From the NCBI RefSeq assembly GCF_033153115.1, contig NW_026889758.1, positions 50,530,001-50,594,000 of the forward strand: a stretch of DNA of 64,000 bases. Reading direction: 5' to 3'. The DNA comes from Saccostrea echinata (taxonomy: Eukaryota). The notes under the pieces are model-generated. The model ran no database searches. It had not been told where the DNA came from and was given only the letters and a program-made list of their open reading frames with translations. This document shows positions 1,863 through 57,631 of the stretch, piece after piece. Within the stretch, counting starts at the first letter, position 1. Each line of letters begins with the position of its first letter. A program made the translations under genes and the position numbers.

Positions 1863-4426
1863 TCTAGAACTGTAACAATTCAATATTCTCTCTTAATATC
1901 ACAGTGAGCAAATGAAATTGCACAGCTCATACTGACACATTTACTGTCAGTGCAGATCTTTCCTCAAATCAAACAACTATAATAATTGTTCAGCTACTTT
2001 AGCATTACCTGGCTTAAAATTAAGCATGACATCACATTAAAATAAATTAAGCTTTTAGTAAATTTGTGAAGGTAAAAAGTTACATTATTTAAAAACATTT
2101 CTGAAAACTAGGGAGTTTTCACCTCTCCCTCAAAGCAAATTAGGAAGATATTTTGAAAATTAAGGGGGACTTGATACACCTAGGAATAACTACTTTAACT
2201 CCCTCCTATTCTGAAATATGAAAAAAAAAACATTGATTTAATCAATATAAATTTATATTTGGTAATTATATTCTAATTTAAATCTACCTAGAGAAAAATC
2301 AATATGCAGCAAATCATATGGTTGAACATTTAGTTTTATTACTAAAAAAAAAAAAAGAAAGAAAAGAAAAAAAAAAAGAAGAAGAGAAATAAAAGAAGTT
2401 CGGCAGACATATTTTTTGTGAAAAATAATTATTTTCTTAAATGTTTATGCTTAATAACATTAAATAAAACAAATGAATAATATATTTCCCTCACTAGGCC
2501 TAAGTTATTGATAGATTTGAAAAAAAAAAGACTGGATGACATTTCTTTTTGCTTACTGATATTAGTCTGAGCCATATCTATTTACGTCCGTGATGCATTT
2601 ATATAAACAGTGAGCTAACTGACACTGTCATGATATTTATAATTGTTTTCAAGATCAGTATAACATTTAGGTATCTTAAATGGCATAAAAAAATTTCATA
2701 ATTAATTTCAAAACTTTGGTGGTCATTTATCAGATGTATGTTGCATAACTAATTTGATACGATCCCATTTTGATTCCTGTTAATATTTTCAGGATTGCAG
2801 CTGTGTAAACGGCTTTATAGGGGACTATTCATTATATTTCCTCTCTAAATAATTTGAAAAGGATACTTTTATAATTATATTAACGACATGAAACAGCAAC
2901 GAACACAGGCTTCTTGCAGACAAAAAGTGCAGCACCATTACGATTTCGTAAAAATAAGAGATAGAAACTTGTAATTTTCCATGGGAAAAAAGTGTAAGGT
3001 TAGAATTTGGCTGGAAAAAATAGGAGGGGTTGGATAACCGGAAACATATTTTTTTTTTAGTCCTCGGATGACCCATAAAACAAAGAACATGTAATTGGTC
3101 CCCCACAAATAATGATGATACATATGAATGAATGAACTTTATTCTCATAACTGACAAAACAGTGAAGAGAAGATATGTACATTATAATAAACAGAAAATA
3201 TTACATGCCTGAAGAGGGATAACAGAGTATAATTATATTGCATTGTGGGTTACCTGGAGACCCACAATGCAATGCTTGTGGATCTTGTTGCTAACTTCAT
3301 TCTCACAGTAACAACAACTAAAAATTCACAAAAAATGAACTCACCTTGAATTAACGGATATTACATACAGACAGTTAGATTAAATGTTCTTTGTTAAGAT
3401 TTTGCACTTTTTCAAACATCATTTAAGGAAATGCAGCTAACATACAACGTCATGTGACGTCACAGTCTAGACGTTCCAAAAGTCTTGTGGGGTCAGAAGA
3501 GGCAGATCTTAAAATTAAGTGAACAACTGTGCTCACCAAAATGGTCACACTGTAAACATATTAAATTTATTTCTCCTTAAATAGATCTTTGTTTTTACAG
3601 TGACAAGGGCCTAGCTGAAGGATATAATTACAAGGGTGGCCTGGGGGTATGATGATGTGAATGTGACTTGACAGTGAAAAAAATAATCAATGTGAATGTG
3701 TATTTTCAAATAAATCTGGCTTGGTTGACCGATTCAGTATGATGTCAGCAAATTTAACACCTTTGTATTTTTCTTATTGATGGAATATGCACAAAATCAG
3801 CTGCAAAACCATGCTTTTCTGATTTGTCATTTGTTTGTTAAACAAAAACTGTTAAAAATCTCGATTATCTGTGTACCTAGAAAATACATAAAACCATACC
3901 AAAAATAAAATGCAAATAAGATGTTGAAAATATATTGCAAACCTGGGAGTACCCGAGATGCTGACTCTTGAGTTATTTCAGTTCTCCCGCGACATTTTCT
4001 ACTTTCGTTTTACATCTATTGATAACTCGACCGTACATTAGTCGCTTTTATCTAGGCTTATGTAAACAAATCCAACTTATCTTATGCTTACTTATGGACC
4101 CAATCTGAAATATGAAGTAAATGACGATTGTTTAATGTATATCAGGTAAGTGATTGTTTTGTAGTCTAGACCAGCAAATGAACTTGATAGTCTGATGAAG
4201 CATAAGCATGACATCGTTACATCTATTTTAAAACTAGTGACAAAATGTTGTGGTCAAGAGTAAACGTGTGTGCTGAATGGAAACGCCCCATCTCTTTGTG
4301 TCTGCAAAACCCCATAGAAAAATGAGTATAGATTATTAAAACGGTACGTTTTTTAGGATCCTTGGTCACATAGATAACTAGAGATCTGCTTTACAGAGTT
4401 GTCGTTCGTTCTCTCTGTTGTAGTTT

Positions 4427-4796
4427 TATGATGCACCGTTTTAATATTTTTGAGGTATTTGCTGTTATCAGAAATTATATCAAGAATTTGAGTTTTTATG
4501 TCAACAAAATCAAATTTTTGATATAAAAAATTCAGAATTCTTTTTGATATCGAAATTTCGATTTTGTGATATCAAGAATTTGATTTTTCAGTATCAGTAA
4601 ATCTTTTTTTTATATCAGGAACTCGAATTTTTGATATCTTAAAATGATTATCTGATATCATTTTGATTATTTTTATATCAAGCATTACTTTTTGATATCA
4701 AAAATTATTTTTATATCAGGAATTCGAATTATTTATATCATTTATCTTCTATTGATATCAGAAATTACCTCAAAAATATTGAAACGGCACCTCATA
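4427..4796. mobile_element. MITE with ~40-bp imperfect TIRs and internal ~20-bp degenerate tandem repeats
   Basis: Left end TATGATGCACCGTTTTAATATTTTTGAGGTA is the inverted match of right end TACCTCAAAAATATTGAAACGGCACCTCATA; the interior consists of repeated TTTTTGATATCAAGAATTCGA-like units. Confidence 0.75.
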
Positions 4797-4954
4797 GTTA
4801 TTAGGCGTTAGTCAATAGGAATTCATATTAGCTTTCCATGTATATTATCGTCTGAATAAAGAAAGTGAACTTGGTATTTGATGTTTTTGATATTTTACTT
4901 GTATGTATTTTTTTTTTAACTTTGAACGTTGAACATTTTGAAACTTTTTTATTC

Positions 4955-5110
4955 GGGGAAGGGGGGGGGGGCTTTTTTTGAGTCAGAATTTTGAGCACCA
5001 GTCAAGGACATATTATATACTTTCGTGTCATTTGAAGATAGATTATTTTCAACATTTTTAGGACAGGTTATTTACCCCCCCCCCCTTTCAGAATCAAATG
5101 GCCGTCACCT
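4955..5110. mobile_element. Degenerate copy of the MITE family also at 48248..48532
   Basis: Shares poly-G/poly-C subtermini, internal AGTCA(A/G)GGACA repeats and the terminus CCCTTTCAGAATCAAATGG with the 48.2-48.5 kb copy. Confidence 0.6.
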
Positions 5111-5274
5111 AGCACTGGCCGCGCCATTGTGAAGACTGGAGTTTTCATTATTCGACTTCTGCCAATTTTCTATGCGTGTAATAAACATCAAACTTAAAAC
5201 TCATCAGTTGCACACTTGAAAGATAAATGTGATGATTTTCATGTTTGAATTTTTTTTTCAGGATTGGTTGAGAA

Positions 5275-6192
5275 ATGTCGTTAGACCGCCTTGAACAACT
5301 TCGTAATGGTCGTTCGAAAGACCTCGATATTTTTCCCGATCCTGAAAAAGTCCCTGTGGATTTAGACATGCAAAGATTCAATAATGGACGTAAATTTTTT
5401 CAGGATAATGTTTCTATGTGCGTTCTTGGAATGTTTTGCTCCCTTGTAGCAGGTTTCAGCGTTGTTAACCTCTTAGAACCACTAGTTTTTACAAACAAAT
5501 CGAACACGGCCAAAAAATCACTCAACCGTTACTTGGATACTGTACGTCACGTCGCTCTGTGGCATTATGGTGATATATGGGACCCACTATCCTTGGCTAG
5601 AAAATCCATAAAGAAAGTTTACGATATGCACACTCATGCCAGAGATAGTATGAAGAAAGCAAACAAAACCAATAGACATTTTACTCAGTATGACATGAGC
5701 CTAGTTCAAGCCGGTTTTATTGGATTTATAATTATGTATCCAGATAGGCTTGGTCTGCGGGGCTCTAGATCTCATCTAGATGACTTTGTTTACTTTTGGA
5801 GATGGATAGGCTTCTTTTCAGGAATCCGGGACGAGAACAACATTTGCATTAATGGATTCGAGGATGCGTATCAAATCTGCAAACAAGTTGAAGATGAAAT
5901 CGTTTACCCCGCACTTTTTAACCCACCAGACCACTTCAACTCGATGGCAAAAGCTTTTACAGAAGGTCTTTCGCTCTTGACAAATGTTACCCTATACACA
6001 CCAGAGTCTGTCATTGGTTTTTCTTTGGATATGGCACGTAAAAAAAGAATTAAGGATGTTGACTTCCTAGACAGTTGCCGGATAATTTATTTAAAAATAA
6101 TCGTTATTTTAGTAAAATATTGTTCCTGTTTCAGAAGTATGGCCAATAGACTGACTGAATCCTTGATTGTGCCAAATAAATTCATTTTCTGA
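5275..6192 (+). CDS. DUF2236 / MpaB / latex-clearing-protein (Lcp)-like oxygenase catalytic-domain protein, paralog 1 (305 aa)
   Basis: Intact single coding exon preceded by acceptor TTTTTTTTCAG (5261). Motifs NRYLDT, VYDMHTHAR, FTQYDMSLVQAGF and LDDFVYFWRWIGFFSGIRDENNIC are typical of the MPAB/Lcp catalytic domain; hydrophobic C-terminus; clearly paralogous to 8061..9014. Confidence 0.85.
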   Translation: MSLDRLEQLRNGRSKDLDIFPDPEKVPVDLDMQRFNNGRKFFQDNVSMCVLGMFCSLVAGFSVVNLLEPLVFTNKSNTAKKSLNRYLDTVRHVALWHYGDIWDPLSLARKSIKKVYDMHTHARDSMKKANKTNRHFTQYDMSLVQAGFIGFIIMYPDRLGLRGSRSHLDDFVYFWRWIGFFSGIRDENNICINGFEDAYQICKQVEDEIVYPALFNPPDHFNSMAKAFTEGLSLLTNVTLYTPESVIGFSLDMARKKRIKDVDFLDSCRIIYLKIIVILVKYCSCFRSMANRLTESLIVPNKFIF

Positions 6193-8060
6193 CTTCTAGT
6201 TTTTAAAACAGTTTGTTGTTTATGGCCCAATTAAGGTATGTCATAAAATTGACATAAGGTCATGTCTTGAAGGTTCAGGTCATGAGTTGTTGAAATTTTG
6301 TCACAGGAATACCATTAATATCGGAACCTTTAAATGGAATAAATTCAAAATACAGTACCCAATATATTTTTGCAGATTGCAGATGACATACAGATTTTTT
6401 TAAAATCTTCAATCAAGGTCACCTCTTTAATGCCAAGGTCGCTTGGCAAATAGATTATGTCAGTACCTTGATGTTGGAATCCGTGAAAGAAGATGTAAAG
6501 TAGGAACCTTATTCAAGAAAATCTCTTATTCCGGGTCAAATATTGATGGTTACACTTATTGGTTTAAAGGGAGGGATATAAGTTATAAATAAGTTTGGTT
6601 AACTTGTCATTACTCTTTCCAGATTTTTTCGGGGGGGGGGGGGCAATGGCCTATCTAGGGTCTTTTTAAATCTTTCTATCACTCGTCTCAAAATCAGTTT
6701 TGTTGAATTTGATAGTATCTAATCGAGAAAAAAAGAGAGATGATATGCTATTATAATAGAAATATGTAAAACCGCTACAACTGGAGAAAGTTTTGCGATA
6801 TATTGCGAAAGAATATCGAGAGAGTTTTGCGTTAAAACGCGAAAATTATGCCTTTAAATTATTCGCAAAAGTTTTTCGTTGTAACGCGGCCGGCGGTTTC
6901 GTTCTAAAAAATTAGGCTTTTATTTGCGAAAGTTTCTCCTTATAATGCGTTTTTTTTTACCTATGTAAGACTCCCCGTGTAGCTTTAATATGAATTAATT
7001 TGGCTGTTAAGAGAGGTACACAGGTCAACCTGAAACACCAATATCGATTTCTTTGTTAAAACATTGGGGGTTTTTTTTTCTTGTAAAATATTTTTCATAG
7101 TTAAGAGTCTCACTGAAATTTTATTGTTCCATGATTTAATAATTAAGAAGGGGAATCTAAAAACAGAAAACATTCTTTAGAGAGATACTCTTCATAGTAA
7201 CTTGTGTGTGTTGGGGAGGGGGGGGGGGTAGTCAAAGGTTTTTGGGGTGTTGGAAGGTTCTACTGATTAAAAGTTCATACCTCGCAGTGATACCTTCACT
7301 TACAAAAGATGTGATACACTGAAGCTTTTTAAAATGAGTGAATGAATGAAAACATACTATATACAATGTAACAAAATCTTATCAACTATACATGTACATT
7401 TTTATATTAAGTGAAAGAGTATAATGCATAGAGACATTCTAATAGTGAACATGAATAATTAAAAGAATGAATGAATGATAACATTCCATGTACCAAATAT
7501 CATTGGCTACATGTACATCATGTGCAACAAACTACATGTACATTTGTATATTAAAGTGAGGAAAGTCTCCGAGAATTCAATAATATCTTGTATTTGGGCA
7601 TTTAAGTTTTATTATTTATTAACACGATCATTCAGTTTTTCGACACGTTAATAATAAATCAATCTTCTTTTCAAATAACCTATGTAGGACTTCAAACATC
7701 TTTTAAAAATTAAGTTATTTCACGTGAGGATCCGTAGAAGGCATGAAGGCATGCTTGACATCACTTTTATTTAGAAAACTATCCTAAGGAAAATCATTTA
7801 GATACTTGGTACATCTCTTTACCGGATAGTGCAGACACTGGACCGGAAAACGAACCAGGTACTAGTAACCGGTTACTAGATTATGACGGGTTTGACAACC
7901 CTAAGTAATAAACTGTCATCTTAGTATCCCTGTAGCTTTGTTTAAATTGTAAACATCCTGAAGACTGACATTAGGAACCTCTTGCCAGTTTTGTAGCTCA
8001 CTCAAGTCCTGAATTATTTCCTTCTCCTAGGACTCTTATTATACGACTGTCTCGATTGAT

Positions 8061-9014
8061 ATGCTAATGGATATACAGACCAAATATTACTTGAAAATTC
8101 TACATGAAGGGAGTTCATATTCCCTTCAACCTTTTCCGGAATCTGGTACTCTATTGCAAGTACACGAGGACATAAATGCTAAGAGATTCAACAATGGACG
8201 AAAGTTTTTTCGTGATAATCTTTCCATGAACGTTTTGGGATTGTCGTGTACTCTTGTGATAGGATTTAGCATTCCAAACCTTCTGGAACCATTAATGTTC
8301 ACGAAGAGGTCAAACTCACCAGAAGCCATTTTACAGCGTTATTTGACAACCATACGTCACGTGACATTATGGCATTATGATGTTTGGGACCCGAACTCTG
8401 CTGCTAGGAAATCCATTAAAATGGTATACAATAGGCATTTAAATGTACGAAATCAAATGAAAGAGCATAATGAAGACACACAATGCTTCACTCAGTACGA
8501 CATGAGCCTTGTGCAGCATGCATTTATACATTACGCCATCTTGCTTTCAGACAAATTAGGTCTTGAATGCACAAAAACTGATTTGGATGATTATGTTTAC
8601 TTCTGGAGATGGATGGGATATTTTTTGGGAATTCGTGATGAGAATAATATTTGCATTAATGGGTTAGAAAATGCAAGAGCTATATGCAAAGAACTGGCAG
8701 AAGCCGTGGTATATCCTGCACTTTCAGCAACTTCAGAAAATTCTGAGAACATGGCACAGACCTTTGCAGATGGATTAACGCTCCTGACATTCATTCCCAT
8801 ACAATCAGCCAAGTCACTTATGGCATTTTACTTGGACATTGACGATGAACCAAGGGATTTTAAACTCACCATTCTTGACAAATGCAGAGTTCTGTTTTTG
8901 AGAAGTGTAGTTCTCGTGTTTAAGCACAGTGCTCTGTTTCGATTTGTGGCGAACAGGGTCACAGAAAGAATCATTTCAGTATCTTGGTTTAGATCTCAGG
9001 TTCTTAATTCATAG
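8061..9014 (+). CDS. DUF2236 / MpaB / Lcp-like oxygenase catalytic-domain protein, paralog 2 (317 aa)
   Basis: Intact single coding exon preceded by acceptor CTTCTCCTAG (8030). Shares RFNNGRKFF, NLLEPL, RYLxT, H-x3-R, FTQYDMSLVQ, YFWRW.G and IRDENNICING blocks with paralog 1. Confidence 0.85.
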   Translation: MLMDIQTKYYLKILHEGSSYSLQPFPESGTLLQVHEDINAKRFNNGRKFFRDNLSMNVLGLSCTLVIGFSIPNLLEPLMFTKRSNSPEAILQRYLTTIRHVTLWHYDVWDPNSAARKSIKMVYNRHLNVRNQMKEHNEDTQCFTQYDMSLVQHAFIHYAILLSDKLGLECTKTDLDDYVYFWRWMGYFLGIRDENNICINGLENARAICKELAEAVVYPALSATSENSENMAQTFADGLTLLTFIPIQSAKSLMAFYLDIDDEPRDFKLTILDKCRVLFLRSVVLVFKHSALFRFVANRVTERIISVSWFRSQVLNS

Positions 9015-9293
9015 CTTAGTCTTCAAATATGAATACTGCTATATACATATACATGTATTATAAATGAGCTCAATTCAGTTTTGACAGTTGGTTATTATTG
9101 TCTGTTTCTCAGCAAATTTTAAAAACCCCACCTTTTTTTTCATAAATTGATCGAATTTAGACAACGGCGGATTTTTTCTTTATTTTTGCCTTTTATTTTT
9201 TGAAATGTAAATTTTCACTAACATTTTATGGGAAATATTGTGTATGATTAGTTTGATAATGAGGTTTGCTTAAATGACGTAGCTCATAGATGA

Positions 9294-11758
9294 TTATTCC
9301 GTTATGGTGAATGTGACGTCAGATGAGTCGTAAATCTCACTGTGGGGATGATTACTTCCACACTCTCCATTGCAGATAACTGAAGAGAGAATCGTATACA
9401 TGTAGGTGAAATTAAAGACATGTCAAATTAAAATACAACAAATTAAAATTGTAGGCATAAAAATTACTCACAGAGAGTATTACGATTAACTGGTGACATT
9501 TACTATTATCATCAGTATGCCTTATCTGCAAGTTTGTACCATGAGAAAATGATAAATGTATATGGAATACTGAATAAACGATAACATATCAGTTGGTTGA
9601 CTTTATAAAAGAAGATTAAATTATCAAGCAACGGTCTACACAGTAAACCTTTACACTTCTTTCTATTTCTGATCAATTAAATTTAATTTTTATACTCCCT
9701 TACATATTTTAACTGTGTAGTTTCCTGGCAGCCACTGTTCGCATGGTTGTTGTGTAGGGTCACACTGCGGATCTGGTTCAGCCTTTAGGTTGAACTTTTG
9801 TGAGTACTGCCCTGCAGGCTGTTCCTCGGCGATGAATCCTCCCTCTGAAGTAGGAAGACATTTTGTGTAAAAAGAAATGAAATCAATCATCGCTTTTTTG
9901 GCGGGAATACTGCAGCATAGTTTGGGCGATGTATAGATTGATTGTAATTGAATTATTGTTTTACGCCGACTCGGAAGTATTTCGACCACATATTGACAAC
10001 GATTTGTACGGAAATTACAGATTCACCAATTAAAATAAAAAATCGCTGAGTATAAGTACTCTCGTATATATTGCAATTATATGTTAGAGAAAAAAAAATC
10101 GATAGTATTTTATTGTAGGATTATTTTTGCAGTCGTAATGAACTTTGTTCCTAAAATCTTAATTTCTTATCAAATGAGGTACATGTACTTACCAACTGGG
10201 ATTCCGTCAACAGTTTTGCATTCCAAGATGATTTCACCGGTTCCTGTGCCATTTTTAGACTCGTACTCAAGATCAATTTCGAAAACACCTTGAAGTATGA
10301 TGGAAATTGATAATTTGTTAGTATATCAAGTATTTGGTAGCAATTTAAAGGAAGTGTTTGAATGGTAATTCTTGATTACCCTGTGGTCCCGATGTTGGTG
10401 TTATAGTCATTGATGTGATTTTAGCGTCACCATCATCCTTGATAGGACAAGCTTTTAGTAACTCACAGAAGTAGATTGGGTCAAGATCTGCTCTGAAAAG
10501 TATCGAGGAAAAAAAACATCTATCAGCAGTTTGTCTCGTAGCTGAATTCTTAGCTTAACAATATAAAAAGGATTAAGCTTTGAATGTGTCAGGTCTCATA
10601 AAGCTCATAAAGCTCTAGCCCTTGTACTAGCTCCATAACTCTCCACCAATATCATACTGATCGGTCGACAATAATCCATATCAAAATGCACATCACTAGA
10701 TGGGCCGGATTCACTTTATATTTTTATTACCTGGCAAATTAGTATTAGTTTCTTTTTTTAAAAAAGCTGATACACATAATTTTCTATCTTTAAAAAAGGA
10801 TTTATACTTCTCGACCAGCTTGACGAATTCCTCTACTCCAACAATATCGCACAAAATATTACAGACGGCACCAAGGGCTTGACTTCCTGTTTTCTGCGCA
10901 AGTGCGTTGCAAAGAGCCCCACATGTGCCAACAACACCGCTTTCTACAAGTATTGCGAGAAAGCCCTAAGAATAATGATGATAAATGACGAAAATCTCAA
11001 AATTTGTTGAATTTTTGAATTGTGAATCAGAAGTTATATTGCTTGCATGTACAACTAAAAAGAATTTCACTCAAAGGACTTGATAGATTTATATATTTAC
11101 ACTTTGCTTTTATTCAAAAAGAGATCAGTATCACGATACTCAATTCTTAATTGTCCAATTCCTATATATGGTAGCCTATTATTTCCTGATCTTTTTTTTT
11201 ATTTCCTTTATGTCGCTTGACACGTACATGTATGGTGACGATTTTGTAAAATTAAAAAAAGTAATTCCACATTATAATTTTAGTGTATAAAGAAAAAATA
11301 TAACTTGGAGAAAATGTTCATGTTTTTTTTTTCCTATTACGTACATATTGTTTATGACTTACGAAGAATGATGTTTAGAAGTATGTCTATGGTTTGACTG
11401 GTGAAGTTGATGCACGTAGGGCAAAGGTCAACGCCCACCTTTGTTGCCTGGGACGGGATGCGGGTCATCGATACCTGACGGAAAAATGTGGCTCTGTTTT
11501 TGGTCACGGGGGTTCCATTTAGGAGAGTTGCTGCAAAAGCTTCCGTCAATAGAAGACCACAGATCACAAACACAGTACCCTAAAGTCGGGAAATGAATCA
11601 CATAATCCCGGATAACGTTTTTTGGTTTGTTCAAACTATCCATATAAATTATTTTAATGTCATGTTGCAACATTTGGAGAAATGAAATTATTTATTTATT
11701 TTGAAAATTCATATTGTTCATGTCTTATAGTTTGACCTGTGTCATACTATACCTTCAT
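9294..11758 (-). CDS. Countin-like secreted protein (saposin-like domain plus beta-rich C-terminal domain), 7 exons, ~264 aa
   Basis: Exons 11758-11753, 11579-11363, 10943-10808, 10492-10380, 10288-10193, 9844-9704 and 9379-9294 all have GT..AG borders and join in frame: MKGTVFVICGLLLTEAFA (signal peptide) ...LCPTCINF...LLNIILQSGVVGTCGALC...AVCNILCDIVG...DLDPIYFCELLKACP...ICNGECGSNHPHSEIYD...TE*. The saposin cysteine pattern and the CxGECGSxHPHS tail are characteristic of countin-family proteins. Confidence 0.88.
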
Positions 11759-33008: not shown

Positions 33009-36023
<3,015 letters not shown>

Positions 36024-55683: not shown

Positions 55684-57631
55684 TTAACAAGTTCTCGTTG
55701 AATCTGGATATCTTGACTTCAGTTCCTCTTTGAAATCTTGGAAGAGAGCTTTATTTTCTCTATGGTCCTTCACTTTTTCCAAGTAGAATGTATTCTTTTG
55801 CTTCTGACCTTTATGAACCAGGAAAGCATTGTTCAGAACAAAAAACTTGTATCCAGCAACATACATCTCACAGATCTGGAAAAAAAAAGAAAGTACCACA
55901 AGCCATTTCATATTAATGCTGCTACAGAATCCATCCGAGACAAAGCAGTGTACATGCAATTATAGTTTGATTTTTGTTCTGATCATGTAGATACCTATCA
56001 CTACACAATGTGCAGCAATCTATGTGAGTGGATCAAATGATCTCACTTTTATTTAGATTGGGACAAAACAATATTGCCAATAGACAACTTTCAAATTTAC
56101 AAAAGTTATTTCCCTTTGCATGGTCAAACCGGGGTCAACCGATGTAAGACAGTTTTCCTTTATAACATTACCAACTTTATGGGGCAATGTCTTACAAATG
56201 AAATCTATTTGAATATGTTTATTATGATTTTTATGTTCCCCCATAATATGGCAATGCAGGAATGGATCAAAACTGTCCAATTCTGTTTAAAGGTTGAAAA
56301 TATTTACAAGCAATTTACAAAGGATATAGTAAGAAAGAAAAAAATAAGAGTAATGCCAACAATAGGAGATAACTCATAAGAAGGTGAAAGTCGTCTATTG
56401 CTCCTATTTATAAATTGTAAAATGTGAAATTTGAACAAACATCAATATACATGTAGATTAATTTGCAAGTACCAAATACTGCAAATACATGTTAGAGAAA
56501 GTAGTGGAGATTTACTGACAGTCTTGATAAATGTTAGGATTAGACAGTGATAAAATACATGTATGTAGCATTTTACAAAAGCACAACCATCAGGTTCACT
56601 TGTGGGCAATATGTTGGAGAATGCCCTACCTGGCTGACTCTGTTGTAGCCATACTGTTTGAATCTCTCCTCATAGAGTGGTAGTAATGACTTGTGTGCAA
56701 TAAAGAATGGTTCGTATGGGAGTTTCCACTGAACTTCATATGCCACTTCTAGTTTTTCACTGCTCTGGAGGGATTCCCATCTATGATAATCTGTTGCAAA
56801 TTGACACCAATGGCACACATTTGCATAAAATGGATGTATATTTTTATTTTGCAAGAGCTCTTGTTTAGTGGACAGAATATGATTTTCACCTGTTTCAAAT
56901 ACAGGTACAATATATGCTGTCCTATCACCAACAGAACTGGAAGACAAAAGATCCCTTTGGAATGAATATAACAGATTTGCTGAAGGATATATGTCTATAT
57001 CAATAGCAAGAACAAATTTGGCTGCCAATGTTTTTATGGCAAGGTTTCTAAGAATATTATGTGGGTATTTTAATTTGTCCTCAAGGACAAAGTTTTGATT
57101 AGATGATTTAGCAAAATATTCTTCAATACAGTCCACATCATGGTATGGAATCTTTGTTATGTTGGTATGGCTTGAGACAGGGAAAACTAAATGGAAAAAA
57201 ACATTGAGCTGTATATGTCTGTAACATGCATATAAATTCTGAATGAGTTGAAGCGCAAAGTCAGCATCATGACTGTGTGTGAAGACTGAAACAGAGATAG
57301 GTCCCGCCCACCTCTTGCTTATTTGCACAAGGTTATGTAGATGATTGGAGGTAGTGTGGGTCACCAGAGCAAGGTCATATGAATCTGTGGGATGTTGTTT
57401 ATTGCTCCCAAGAATATCAGGCACAAGGAAGTAAAACCCGCTGCTGTCAGTCTTGTAAGCGTCTCTAACTCTCTGCATTATTCCATCCCACACAGAGTTA
57501 GGGTAATTCTTTGTGTCTTTGAAATCTTCCAGTTGCCCCATGAGGTAAATGTGATAAACCTGAAGCATTATCACCAATACTACCATGAATAGGATCACTT
57601 TCTGTATACTTGGTACACATCTTGCTCTCAT
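55684..57631 (-). CDS. B4GAT1: Beta-1,4-glucuronyltransferase 1-like (GT49), 2 coding exons, ~397 aa
   Basis: Exons 57631-56630 and 55875-55684. Type II TM anchor, RWAGPISVSVF, YPHNILRNLA, DID (DxD), YEPFFI, PLYEERFKQYGYNRVSQ|ICEMYVAGYKFFVLNNAFLVHKG. Confidence 0.92.
56084..56400 (+). repeat. Dispersed repeat, copy of 50388..50705, in the B4GAT1 intron
   Basis: Co-linear similarity to the 50.4-50.7 kb copy. Confidence 0.75.

What the first reader, a model, noticed from the sequence alone, without database searches (positions are those of the whole stretch)
5275..9014. Tandem animal Lcp/MpaB-like heme oxygenases that keep the rubber-oxygenase active-site pattern
Seen: two intact paralogs. Paralog 1 has E68, R85, T89, H119, R123; paralog 2 has E76, R93, T97, H126, R130. 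Known (from memory): Streptomyces K30 latex clearing protein uses Arg164, Thr168 and the heme ligand His198, with Glu148 as proposed base and conserved Arg195/Arg202, and fungal MpaB cleaves a farnesyl C=C bond. In paralog 1 the R..T (+4), R..H (+34) and H..R (+4) spacings equal those of Lcp exactly; paralog 2 is +4/+33/+4. Both have a Glu at -17 (Lcp -16). Both replace the Arg195 position with Tyr (VYDMH, VYNRH) and the Lys167 distal-ligand position with Asp/Thr. Inference: these may be catalytically competent b-heme dioxygenases cleaving isoprenoid or other lipid double bonds (dietary algal carotenoids/phytol, squalene, dolichol, quinone tails) in a bivalve. I do not know of this activity being characterised for animal members.
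Basis: partly seen in the sequence, partly recalled or inferred. Interest (0 to 1): 0.8.

Follow-up and report, generated by a model that had tools for sequence, protein, structure and literature searches.

The report
Two oyster Lcp/MpaB-family heme oxygenase genes
Two neighbouring, expressed oyster genes encode proteins of the bacterial/fungal heme oxygenase family that cuts carbon-carbon double bonds; they keep its three key heme-site residues, but they are ordinary members of a large invertebrate and protist branch whose function nobody has tested.

Summary
Window 5275-6192 and 8061-9014 (+ strand) are intact ORFs of 305 and 317 aa, 50% identical.

A high-confidence AlphaFold model (pLDDT 93.6) matches latex clearing protein (Lcp) at Z 20.6. 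It matches trans-anethole oxygenase at Z 15.8, and no other chain scores above Z 2.5. A 103-sequence profile of relatives hits Lcp at E 8e-12. It aligns R93/T97/H126 of paralog 2 with Lcp Arg164/Thr168/His198. These three are the only invariant columns in that alignment.

The other "pattern" residues are weaker:
- The Glu is one position off Glu148 and is poorly conserved.
- The second Arg is not conserved.
- Tyr in place of Arg195 is a change specific to the oyster clade.

Both genes appear in spliced transcriptome-like contigs, and paralog 1 has a 5'UTR intron. These are therefore real animal genes, not contamination.

The family is not special to this oyster. An exhaustive search found 1353 clusters, with named members in other molluscs, insects, crustaceans, ticks, mites and protists. 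Orthologues already carry the automatic MpaB/rubber-oxygenase label.

Most likely these are intracellular b-heme oxygenases that cleave an alkene, with the substrate unknown. They are new members of a known kind, of moderate interest.

The parts
4112..4145 (+). 3' end of the non-coding first exon (5'UTR) of paralog 1. The donor is ...TATATCAG|GTAAGT at 4145|4146.
   Evidence: Loose letters that precede position 5258 in contigs of X2 and X4 map exactly and uniquely to 4112-4141. The donor was read.
4146..5261 (+). 5'UTR intron of paralog 1 (GT..AG, 1116 nt). The acceptor is tttttttttcag|G at 5261|5262.
5275..6192 (+). Paralog 1 coding sequence, a single coding exon of 305 aa plus stop. It is an MPAB_Lcp_cat protein and the orthologue of Saccostrea cucullata LOC134278818 (85% identity).
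   Evidence: ORF. Pfam 27.3 bits against a cut-off of 23. Covered by contigs in 4 runs, 5258-6196. Tree.
5527..5541 (+). Paralog 1 distal-helix codons R85...T89, equivalent to Lcp Arg164...Thr168.
5629..5631 (+). Paralog 1 H119 codon, the predicted proximal heme ligand (equivalent to Lcp His198).
8061..9014 (+). Paralog 2 coding sequence, a single exon of 317 aa plus stop. A public gene model starts at the third codon, giving 315 aa. It is an MPAB_Lcp_cat protein and the faster-evolving older duplicate.
   Evidence: ORF. Pfam 32.1 bits. Contigs covering 7970-9072 and 7333-9379. Tree branch 0.82 against 0.095 for paralog 1.
8337..8351 (+). Paralog 2 distal-helix codons R93...T97, equivalent to Lcp Arg164...Thr168. 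H100 follows at 8358-8360.
8436..8438 (+). Paralog 2 H126 codon, the predicted proximal heme ligand (equivalent to Lcp His198).
8376..8377 (+). Site of an in-frame 3-nt indel polymorphism. Contigs of X1, X2 and X4 have +ATG here, adding one Asp (WHYDDVWD).

Best explanation
Both genes encode intracellular, all-helical, globin-like proteins of the Lcp/MpaB/trans-anethole-oxygenase family (Pfam PF09995, formerly DUF2236). They most likely bind one non-covalent b-type heme. The proximal ligand would be His119 in paralog 1 and His126 in paralog 2, on the F-like helix. Arg85/93 and Thr89/97 would sit one turn apart on the distal E-like helix and position heme-bound O2. By analogy with every characterised member, the proteins would use O2 to cleave a C=C bond in a hydrophobic substrate into two carbonyl products. 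They have no Lys at the Lcp distal-ligand position, so the resting heme is probably five-coordinate ('open'). Alternatively it may be gated by the conserved His three residues after the Thr (H92/H100), a feature shared with trans-anethole oxygenase. Shown here: family membership, fold, conservation of the triad, expression, and eukaryotic gene structure. Inferred: heme binding, the O2 chemistry and the C=C target. The substrate is unknown; an isoprenoid or lipid alkene is a guess drawn from the known substrates of the family.
For: - **Pfam.** PF09995 scores above its cut-off for both proteins, and for 84 of 103 relatives at E <= 0.001.
- **Fold.** An AF2 model built from the 103-sequence alignment has pLDDT 93.6 and pTM 0.92. 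VIA-align gives Lcp 5o1l Z 20.6 (291 residues aligned, rmsd 3.9) and trans-anethole oxygenase 8s1j Z 15.8. The next chain scores only Z 2.5. Foldseek ranks Lcp first, probability 1.00, TM 0.62.
- **Profile hit.** The clade profile hits Lcp at E 8e-12. It aligns R93=R164, T97=T168, H126=H198, Y123=R195 and R130=R202.
- **Invariance.** R93, T97 and H126 are the only invariant columns among 103 sequences at about 25-50% identity. Both paralogs also keep all 16 nearly invariant residues.
- **Literature on the triad.** R164, T168 and H198 are the three near-invariant DUF2236 residues in 495 Lcps. H198 is the proximal ligand. R164A is inactive and T168A keeps 2% activity (PMC5522427; PMC6311187).
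- **Chemistry of characterised members.** All of these oxygenases cleave C=C bonds, and b-type heme is on record for Lcp and Nro1:
  - Lcp cleaves polyisoprene.
  - MpaB' cleaves the farnesyl C19=C20 bond.
  - Nro1 cleaves nitrile rubber, is 323 aa and shows a Soret band at 425 nm.
  - Trans-anethole oxygenase belongs to the class described by Purwani et al. 2024, as cited.
- **Expression and gene structure.** Contigs from four runs in two studies cover both coding sequences. The same runs contain spliced joints, and paralog 1 has a GT..AG 5'UTR intron.
- **Localisation.** There is no N-terminal hydrophobic segment, so no signal peptide.
Against: - No cofactor or activity can be measured here.
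- No atomic coordinates were available, so the geometry of the His and the pocket was not checked directly.
- The proposed base Glu148 has no clear counterpart. E76 aligns one residue off and is Glu in only 33 of 122 relatives.
- Arg195, a stabilising residue in Lcp, is Tyr in the oyster clade. Trans-anethole oxygenase has Asn there, however.
- Sequence identity to Lcp is only 11-14%.
- Variants in the RNA contigs are rich in non-synonymous changes: 8 non-synonymous to 4 synonymous in paralog 1 and 4 to 2 in paralog 2. One is G167C at a nearly invariant Gly. This may indicate relaxed constraint, but the numbers are small.
Confidence: 0.65

Rival explanations
1. The proteins bind heme but are not alkene-cleaving dioxygenases. 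They could be gas or redox sensors, heme carriers or buffers, or they could catalyse another heme reaction such as peroxidase, mono-oxygenase or epoxidase chemistry.
For: Lcp has a 3/3 globin fold that resembles globin-coupled sensor proteins. The acid/base residue proposed for C=C cleavage (Glu148 in Lcp, D124 in MpaB') has no conserved counterpart in this clade. The clade has its own nearly invariant residues with no Lcp equivalent, N196 and C198.
Against: Every characterised member of the family cleaves C=C bonds. The two residues needed for catalysis but not for heme binding in Lcp (Arg164 and Thr168; their muteins still hold heme) are invariant here. That is hard to explain for a mere heme binder.
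Confidence: 0.2
2. The proteins have lost heme binding and act as non-enzymatic scaffolds or lipid-binding proteins (pseudoenzymes). Alternatively, paralog 2 is drifting towards loss of function.
For: Paralog 2 sits on a long branch, 0.82 against 0.095 for paralog 1. Arg195 has become Tyr. Variants are rich in non-synonymous changes and include G167C. No orthologue of paralog 2 was found in the databases.
Against: Both ORFs are intact and transcribed. Both keep the 3 invariant and all 16 nearly invariant residues of the clade. The Tyr predates the duplication and is shared by five oyster-clade sequences. An active family member has Asn at that position.
Confidence: 0.1
3. The ORFs are bacterial or fungal contamination, or a recent horizontal transfer, rather than resident animal genes.
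For: The coding sequences have no introns, and the family is best known from actinobacteria and fungi.
Against: Paralog 1 has a spliced 5'UTR exon with canonical GT..AG ends. The genes lie inside a 54-Mb contig between ordinary animal genes. The tree groups them as oyster, then bivalve, then mollusc, as expected for vertical descent. GC content of 33-36% matches the flanks.
Confidence: 0.02

Closest known systems
Latex clearing protein LcpK30 of Streptomyces sp. K30 (PDB 5O1L/5O1M), the rubber oxygenase of Pfam PF09995
   Same: The whole-chain fold matches (Z 20.6, 291 residues aligned). The profile hit is E 8e-12. The Arg164/Thr168/His198 triad and the Arg202 equivalent are present. Further motifs are shared: S-Q-x-D, H-x-W and L-G-x-x-D-x-Y.
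   Different: Sequence identity is only 11-14%. The oyster proteins have no secretion signal (Lcp is extracellular), no Lys167 distal ligand, Tyr instead of Arg195, and no aligned Glu148. They are about 70-100 residues shorter. An animal is very unlikely to use polyisoprene rubber as a substrate.
Trans-anethole oxygenase of Stenotrophomonas maltophilia (PDB 8S1J) and the related bacterial heme C=C-cleaving oxygenases, including Nro1 of Gordonia
   Same: The size is similar, about 300-323 aa. The fold matches at Z 15.8. The distal-helix motif R-x3-T-x2-H-x3-W and the proximal V-x-x-x-H are shared. The Arg195 position is likewise not Arg.
   Different: The sequence match is weak (E 0.09). The bacterial enzymes act on small phenylpropenes or synthetic rubber. 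The animal/protist clade has its own conserved N-x-C loop (N196, C198).
Fungal MpaB/MpaB' of mycophenolic acid biosynthesis
   Same: They belong to the same Pfam family and are eukaryotic and intracellular. MpaB' cleaves the terminal C=C of a farnesyl chain. The ESM Atlas model of paralog 2 matches an Ascomycota PF09995 cluster at TM 0.82.
   Different: MpaB' is an ER-bound monotopic membrane protein encoded in a biosynthetic gene cluster. The oyster proteins show no clear membrane anchor and no pathway context. No direct alignment with MpaB was made here.
Uncharacterised invertebrate and protist PF09995 proteins, for example Saccostrea cucullata LOC134278818, Dreissena LOC127873084, Patella LOC126822497 and Artemia LOC136027213
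   Same: This is the clade to which the two genes belong. Identity is 85% (paralog 1) and 51% (paralog 2) to the Saccostrea protein, and the invariant and nearly invariant residues are the same.
   Different: The oyster subclade has Tyr at the Arg195 position. Paralog 2 is a divergent extra copy with no orthologue found elsewhere.

Membership tests
Pfam PF09995 MPAB_Lcp_cat (DUF2236) | Score above the curated gathering threshold of the family HMM | tested here: met
   27.3 and 32.1 bits against a cut-off of 23. 84 of 103 clade members match at E <= 0.001.
Pfam PF09995 MPAB_Lcp_cat (DUF2236) | All-helical 3/3 globin-like fold with N- and C-terminal helical extensions, as in Lcp | tested here: met
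   The model has pLDDT 93.6. Z is 20.6 to 5o1l and 15.8 to 8s1j, and the next chain scores 2.5.
Pfam PF09995 MPAB_Lcp_cat (DUF2236) | Near-invariant Arg/Thr/His triad (Lcp R164/T168/H198) | tested here: met
   R93, T97 and H126 are the only invariant columns of 103 sequences. They align to R164, T168 and H198 at E 8e-12. The definition of the triad comes from PMC6311187.
Pfam PF09995 MPAB_Lcp_cat (DUF2236) | Non-covalently bound b-type heme | not testable with these tools
   This needs purified protein (Soret band, pyridine hemochrome).
Pfam PF09995 MPAB_Lcp_cat (DUF2236) | O2-dependent cleavage of a C=C bond | not testable with these tools
   Biochemical assay only.
Latex clearing protein (rubber oxygenase) in the strict sense | Secreted enzyme with an export signal | tested here: not met
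   The N-termini are hydrophilic and charged. No hydrophobic window lies before residue 45.
Latex clearing protein (rubber oxygenase) in the strict sense | Lys167 distal axial ligand (59% conserved in Lcps) | tested here: not met
   D88 in paralog 1 and T96 in paralog 2. The position is variable across the clade.
Latex clearing protein (rubber oxygenase) in the strict sense | Glu148 as the channel base | tested here: inconclusive
   The ungapped profile alignment places E76 on Arg147 and P77 on Glu148. E76 is Glu in 33 of 122 relatives. In Nro1 the equivalent acid was assigned spatially, not from the sequence alignment, so a structural superposition is needed.
Latex clearing protein (rubber oxygenase) in the strict sense | Strictly conserved structural Arg195 and Arg202 | tested here: not met
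   The Arg195 position is Tyr in both paralogs. The Arg202 position is Arg in both, but in only 38 of 122 clade members.
Fungal MpaB/MpaB' | ER-bound monotopic membrane association within a mycophenolic acid gene cluster | tested here: inconclusive
   No N-terminal anchor was found. The hydrophobic stretch at residues 46-68 aligns to a buried helix of soluble Lcp. The neighbouring genes are unrelated animal genes.

The most novel reading that the evidence does not exclude
The invertebrate and protist PF09995 clade, including this oyster pair, would be a second, unrecognised class of animal alkene-cleaving dioxygenases. It would be heme-b dependent and unrelated to the RPE65/NinaB-type carotenoid oxygenases. 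It would act on an endogenous or dietary isoprenoid, such as sesquiterpenoid hormone precursors, polyprenyl-quinone or dolichol tails, phytol, squalene or carotenoids. The oyster duplication would then have produced two substrate specificities.
Probability: 0.3. Interest if true: 0.7.

Novelty: new member of a known kind. Interest (0 to 1): 0.4.

Why it matters
All characterised enzymes of this family come from bacteria or fungi. They carry out an unusual, ozonolysis-like cleavage of C=C bonds. A conserved and expressed clade with the intact catalytic triad exists in molluscs, arthropods and marine protists, which suggests animals have a heme-dependent alkene-cleaving activity with no assigned physiological role. 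Finding its substrate could reveal a new step in isoprenoid or lipid catabolism, or in signalling. It could also supply small, soluble eukaryotic biocatalysts. The oyster pair itself adds little beyond being a clean, single-exon and expressed example that is easy to clone.

Tried and rejected
- **Single-sequence search of the PDB.** Paralog 2 found nothing. A 7-sequence profile reached Lcp only at E about 0.8. The 103-sequence profile was needed.
- **Word-indexed homologue search.** It returned only 9-11 relatives, which wrongly suggests a tiny family. The exhaustive HMMER search found 1353 clusters.
- **NCBIfam.** No meaningful hit; UgtL scored 18.9 bits against a cut-off of 120.
- **More copies.** None was found, either in the window by tblastn or in the 923-Mb genome with the clade profile or PF09995. 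These counts are lower bounds by the tool's own caveat.
- **dN/dS between the paralogs.** dS is saturated.
- **Contamination or recent horizontal transfer.** Rejected because of the spliced 5'UTR and the mollusc-congruent tree.
- **A transmembrane reading of the hydrophobic stretch at residues 46-68.** Rejected, because it aligns to a core helix of soluble Lcp.
- **Literature searches for a characterised animal or Drosophila member.** They found none.
- **Search for the trans-anethole oxygenase paper.** It returned only unrelated papers. That enzyme is cited through the PDB title and the reference list of PMC12724181.
- **Earlier findings of this scan.** Nothing for this place or for these words.
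- **Tree.** The careful tree search did not finish. The quick IQ-TREE tree was used.
Full report
**What is there.** The window holds two intact ORFs on the + strand, at 5275..6192 (305 aa, paralog 1) and 8061..9014 (317 aa, paralog 2). They are 1.87 kb apart and there are no N runs in the window. The proteins are 50% identical over 296 residues, E 5e-111. At the DNA level only about 500 nt of the coding core is still alignable, at 67% identity, and dS is saturated. The duplication is therefore old. The Lcp residue numbers it recalled are correct according to the LcpK30 structure paper PMC5522427.

**These are real, expressed animal genes.** Contigs from four public runs in two studies lie on both coding sequences. 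The runs are flagged only as "RNA?". However, they are 45-75 Mb assemblies, and they carry a joint at 9379->9704 that skips 324 nt with CT..AC ends. That is a GT..AG intron of a convergent minus-strand gene, so they behave as transcriptomes.

For paralog 1, the letters that precede position 5258 in two contigs map uniquely to 4112-4141. The genome there reads ...TATATCAG|GTAAGT, and the acceptor is tttttttttcag|G at 5261|5262. This shows a 1116-nt intron in the 5'UTR, with the whole coding sequence in one exon.

For paralog 2, contigs read straight through from at least 7970 (7333 in one run) to beyond the stop codon.

Three runs carry an in-frame +ATG after 8376, which adds an Asp (WHYDDVWD). 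This restores the Arg-to-His spacing of +34 seen in paralog 1 and in Lcp.

Neighbouring ORFs are ordinary animal genes, with Ras-family exons and a Glyco_transf_49 ORF. The clade profile and PF09995 find no further copy in the 923-Mb assembly (lower bounds).

**Family and fold.** Both proteins pass the gathering score of Pfam PF09995 MPAB_Lcp_cat, at 27.3 and 32.1 bits against 23. The word-indexed search found only nine relatives. The closest named one is an uncharacterised Saccostrea cucullata protein. The exhaustive profile search found 1353 clusters at E <= 1e-3 and 202 at E <= 1e-30.

Named members come from these groups:
- Molluscs: Patella, Dreissena, Mizuhopecten.
- Insects: Blattella, Chelonus, Gonioctena.
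- A crustacean: Artemia.
- A tick and a mite: Haemaphysalis, Sarcoptes.
- Protists: the diplonemid Lacrimia, a Picozoa record and an MMETSP transcript.

The nearest ESM Atlas clusters are arthropod PF09995 families. Several orthologues already carry UniProt's automatic name [quoted passage not shown].

An AlphaFold2 model of paralog 2 rose from pLDDT 74.5 with 7 sequences to 93.6, pTM 0.92, with 103 sequences. VIA-align gives Lcp 5o1l Z 20.6 (291 residues aligned, rmsd 3.9), Lcp 5o1m Z 20.3 and trans-anethole oxygenase 8s1j Z 15.8. The next chain scores Z 2.5. Foldseek agrees.

**Active-site pattern.** In the 103-sequence alignment, at 22-51% identity to paralog 2, the only invariant columns are R93, T97 and H126. 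Sixteen more columns are at least 90% conserved, and both paralogs carry the consensus residue at all of them.

The profile of this alignment hits Lcp at E 8e-12 over 170 residues. The alignment puts R93 on Arg164, T96 on Lys167, T97 on Thr168, Y123 on Arg195, H126 on His198 and R130 on Arg202. It also shares the SQxD, HxW and LGxxDxY motifs.

The rubber-oxygenase review reports that R164, T168 and H198 are the three near-invariant DUF2236 residues in 495 Lcps. H198 is the proximal heme ligand, R164 is essential and T168A keeps 2% activity. The review concludes that other DUF2236 proteins presumably also hold heme (PMC6311187; PMC5522427). The animal clade reproduces this signature independently.

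In the model, R93, T97 and H100 lie on one helix (87-103) and H126 on the next long helix (114-136). This matches the distal E and proximal F helices of Lcp.

- **The Glu.** E76 aligns with Arg147, one register off Glu148. That position is Glu in 33 of 122 relatives.
- **The H+4 Arg.** It is Arg in 38 of 122 relatives.
- **The Lys167 position.** It is variable.
- **The Arg195 position.** It is Arg in 102 of 122 relatives. It is Tyr in the five oyster-clade sequences and Arg in the next bivalve sequences. The Tyr is thus a derived trait that predates the duplication. Trans-anethole oxygenase has Asn at this position, so Arg is not required in the family.

The clade shares the distal motif R-x3-T-x2-H-x3-W with trans-anethole oxygenase. 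It also has its own nearly invariant N196 and C198 in the loop after helix 172-188. Their role is unknown.

**Evolution.** A quick maximum-likelihood tree, with SH-aLRT support only because the careful search was unfinished, places paralog 1 next to the Saccostrea cucullata protein (85% identity). Two unnamed oyster-like sequences come next. Paralog 2 is sister to that group (99% support) on a long branch of 0.82, against 0.095 for paralog 1. The whole set sits inside a bivalve and then a mollusc grouping. This pattern fits vertical descent, with an old tandem duplication and faster evolution of paralog 2.

Variants in the RNA contigs are rather rich in non-synonymous changes. One is G167C at a nearly invariant Gly in one run. 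The numbers are too small for a conclusion.

**Mechanism.** I commit to an intracellular b-heme oxygenase that binds O2 at a five-coordinate heme held by His119/126. Arg85/93 and Thr89/97, and perhaps His92/100, would shape the distal site. The enzyme would cleave a C=C bond of a hydrophobic substrate to two carbonyls, as Lcp, MpaB', Nro1 and trans-anethole oxygenase do.

Shown here: family, fold, triad, expression and gene structure. Inferred: heme binding, the chemistry and the class of substrate. There is no signal peptide, so rubber-like extracellular substrates are not expected.

**Limits.**
- The runs used for expression are only presumed to be RNA.
- No joined or spliced sequence was needed, since both coding sequences are single exons.

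**Verdict.** The genes are well-behaved members of a large, already auto-annotated but functionally unstudied invertebrate and protist branch of the Lcp/MpaB family. They are new members of a known kind, and of moderate interest, mainly because no animal member has a known substrate.

Noticed in passing
window 9172-9800 (minus strand): A convergent minus-strand spliced transcript. Contigs in three runs join 9379 to 9704, skipping 324 nt with CT..AC ends (GT..AG on the minus strand). Its 3' end, near 9172, lies about 160 bp from the stop codon of paralog 2. One assembly merges the two transcripts into a single contig.
   Followed up: partly
window 8376: An in-frame 3-nt indel in paralog 2. Contigs of X1, X2 and X4 have +ATG, adding one Asp. 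The window's assembly allele is one codon shorter than those three runs and than the family consensus.
   Followed up: yes
window 8559: One run (X1) carries G>T, which gives G167C in paralog 2 at a Gly that is conserved in at least 90% of the clade. It could be an allele of a divergent population or a sign of relaxed constraint.
   Followed up: no
window 8640-8654 (paralog 2 N196-C198) and the equivalent codons in paralog 1: The animal/protist clade has a nearly invariant N-x-C loop motif (GI-x-D-x-[YFN]-N-x-C). Lcp has no counterpart there (it reads GVSDEYIP). The conserved Cys is unexplained.
   Followed up: no
window 33009-33605 (minus strand): An ORF with matches to Ras-family GTPase exons (Pfam PF00071, E 1.4e-17), interrupted by what look like introns.
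   Followed up: no
window 56573-57631 (minus strand): A 352-aa ORF that matches Glyco_transf_49, a dystroglycan-type glycosyltransferase (E 2.4e-64).
   Followed up: no
window 5075-5110: A short stretch upstream of paralog 1 (about 32-34 nt) also occurs at the end of an unrelated 1703-nt contig in X3 and in a 44-nt contig in X2. It is probably a dispersed repeat.
   Followed up: no
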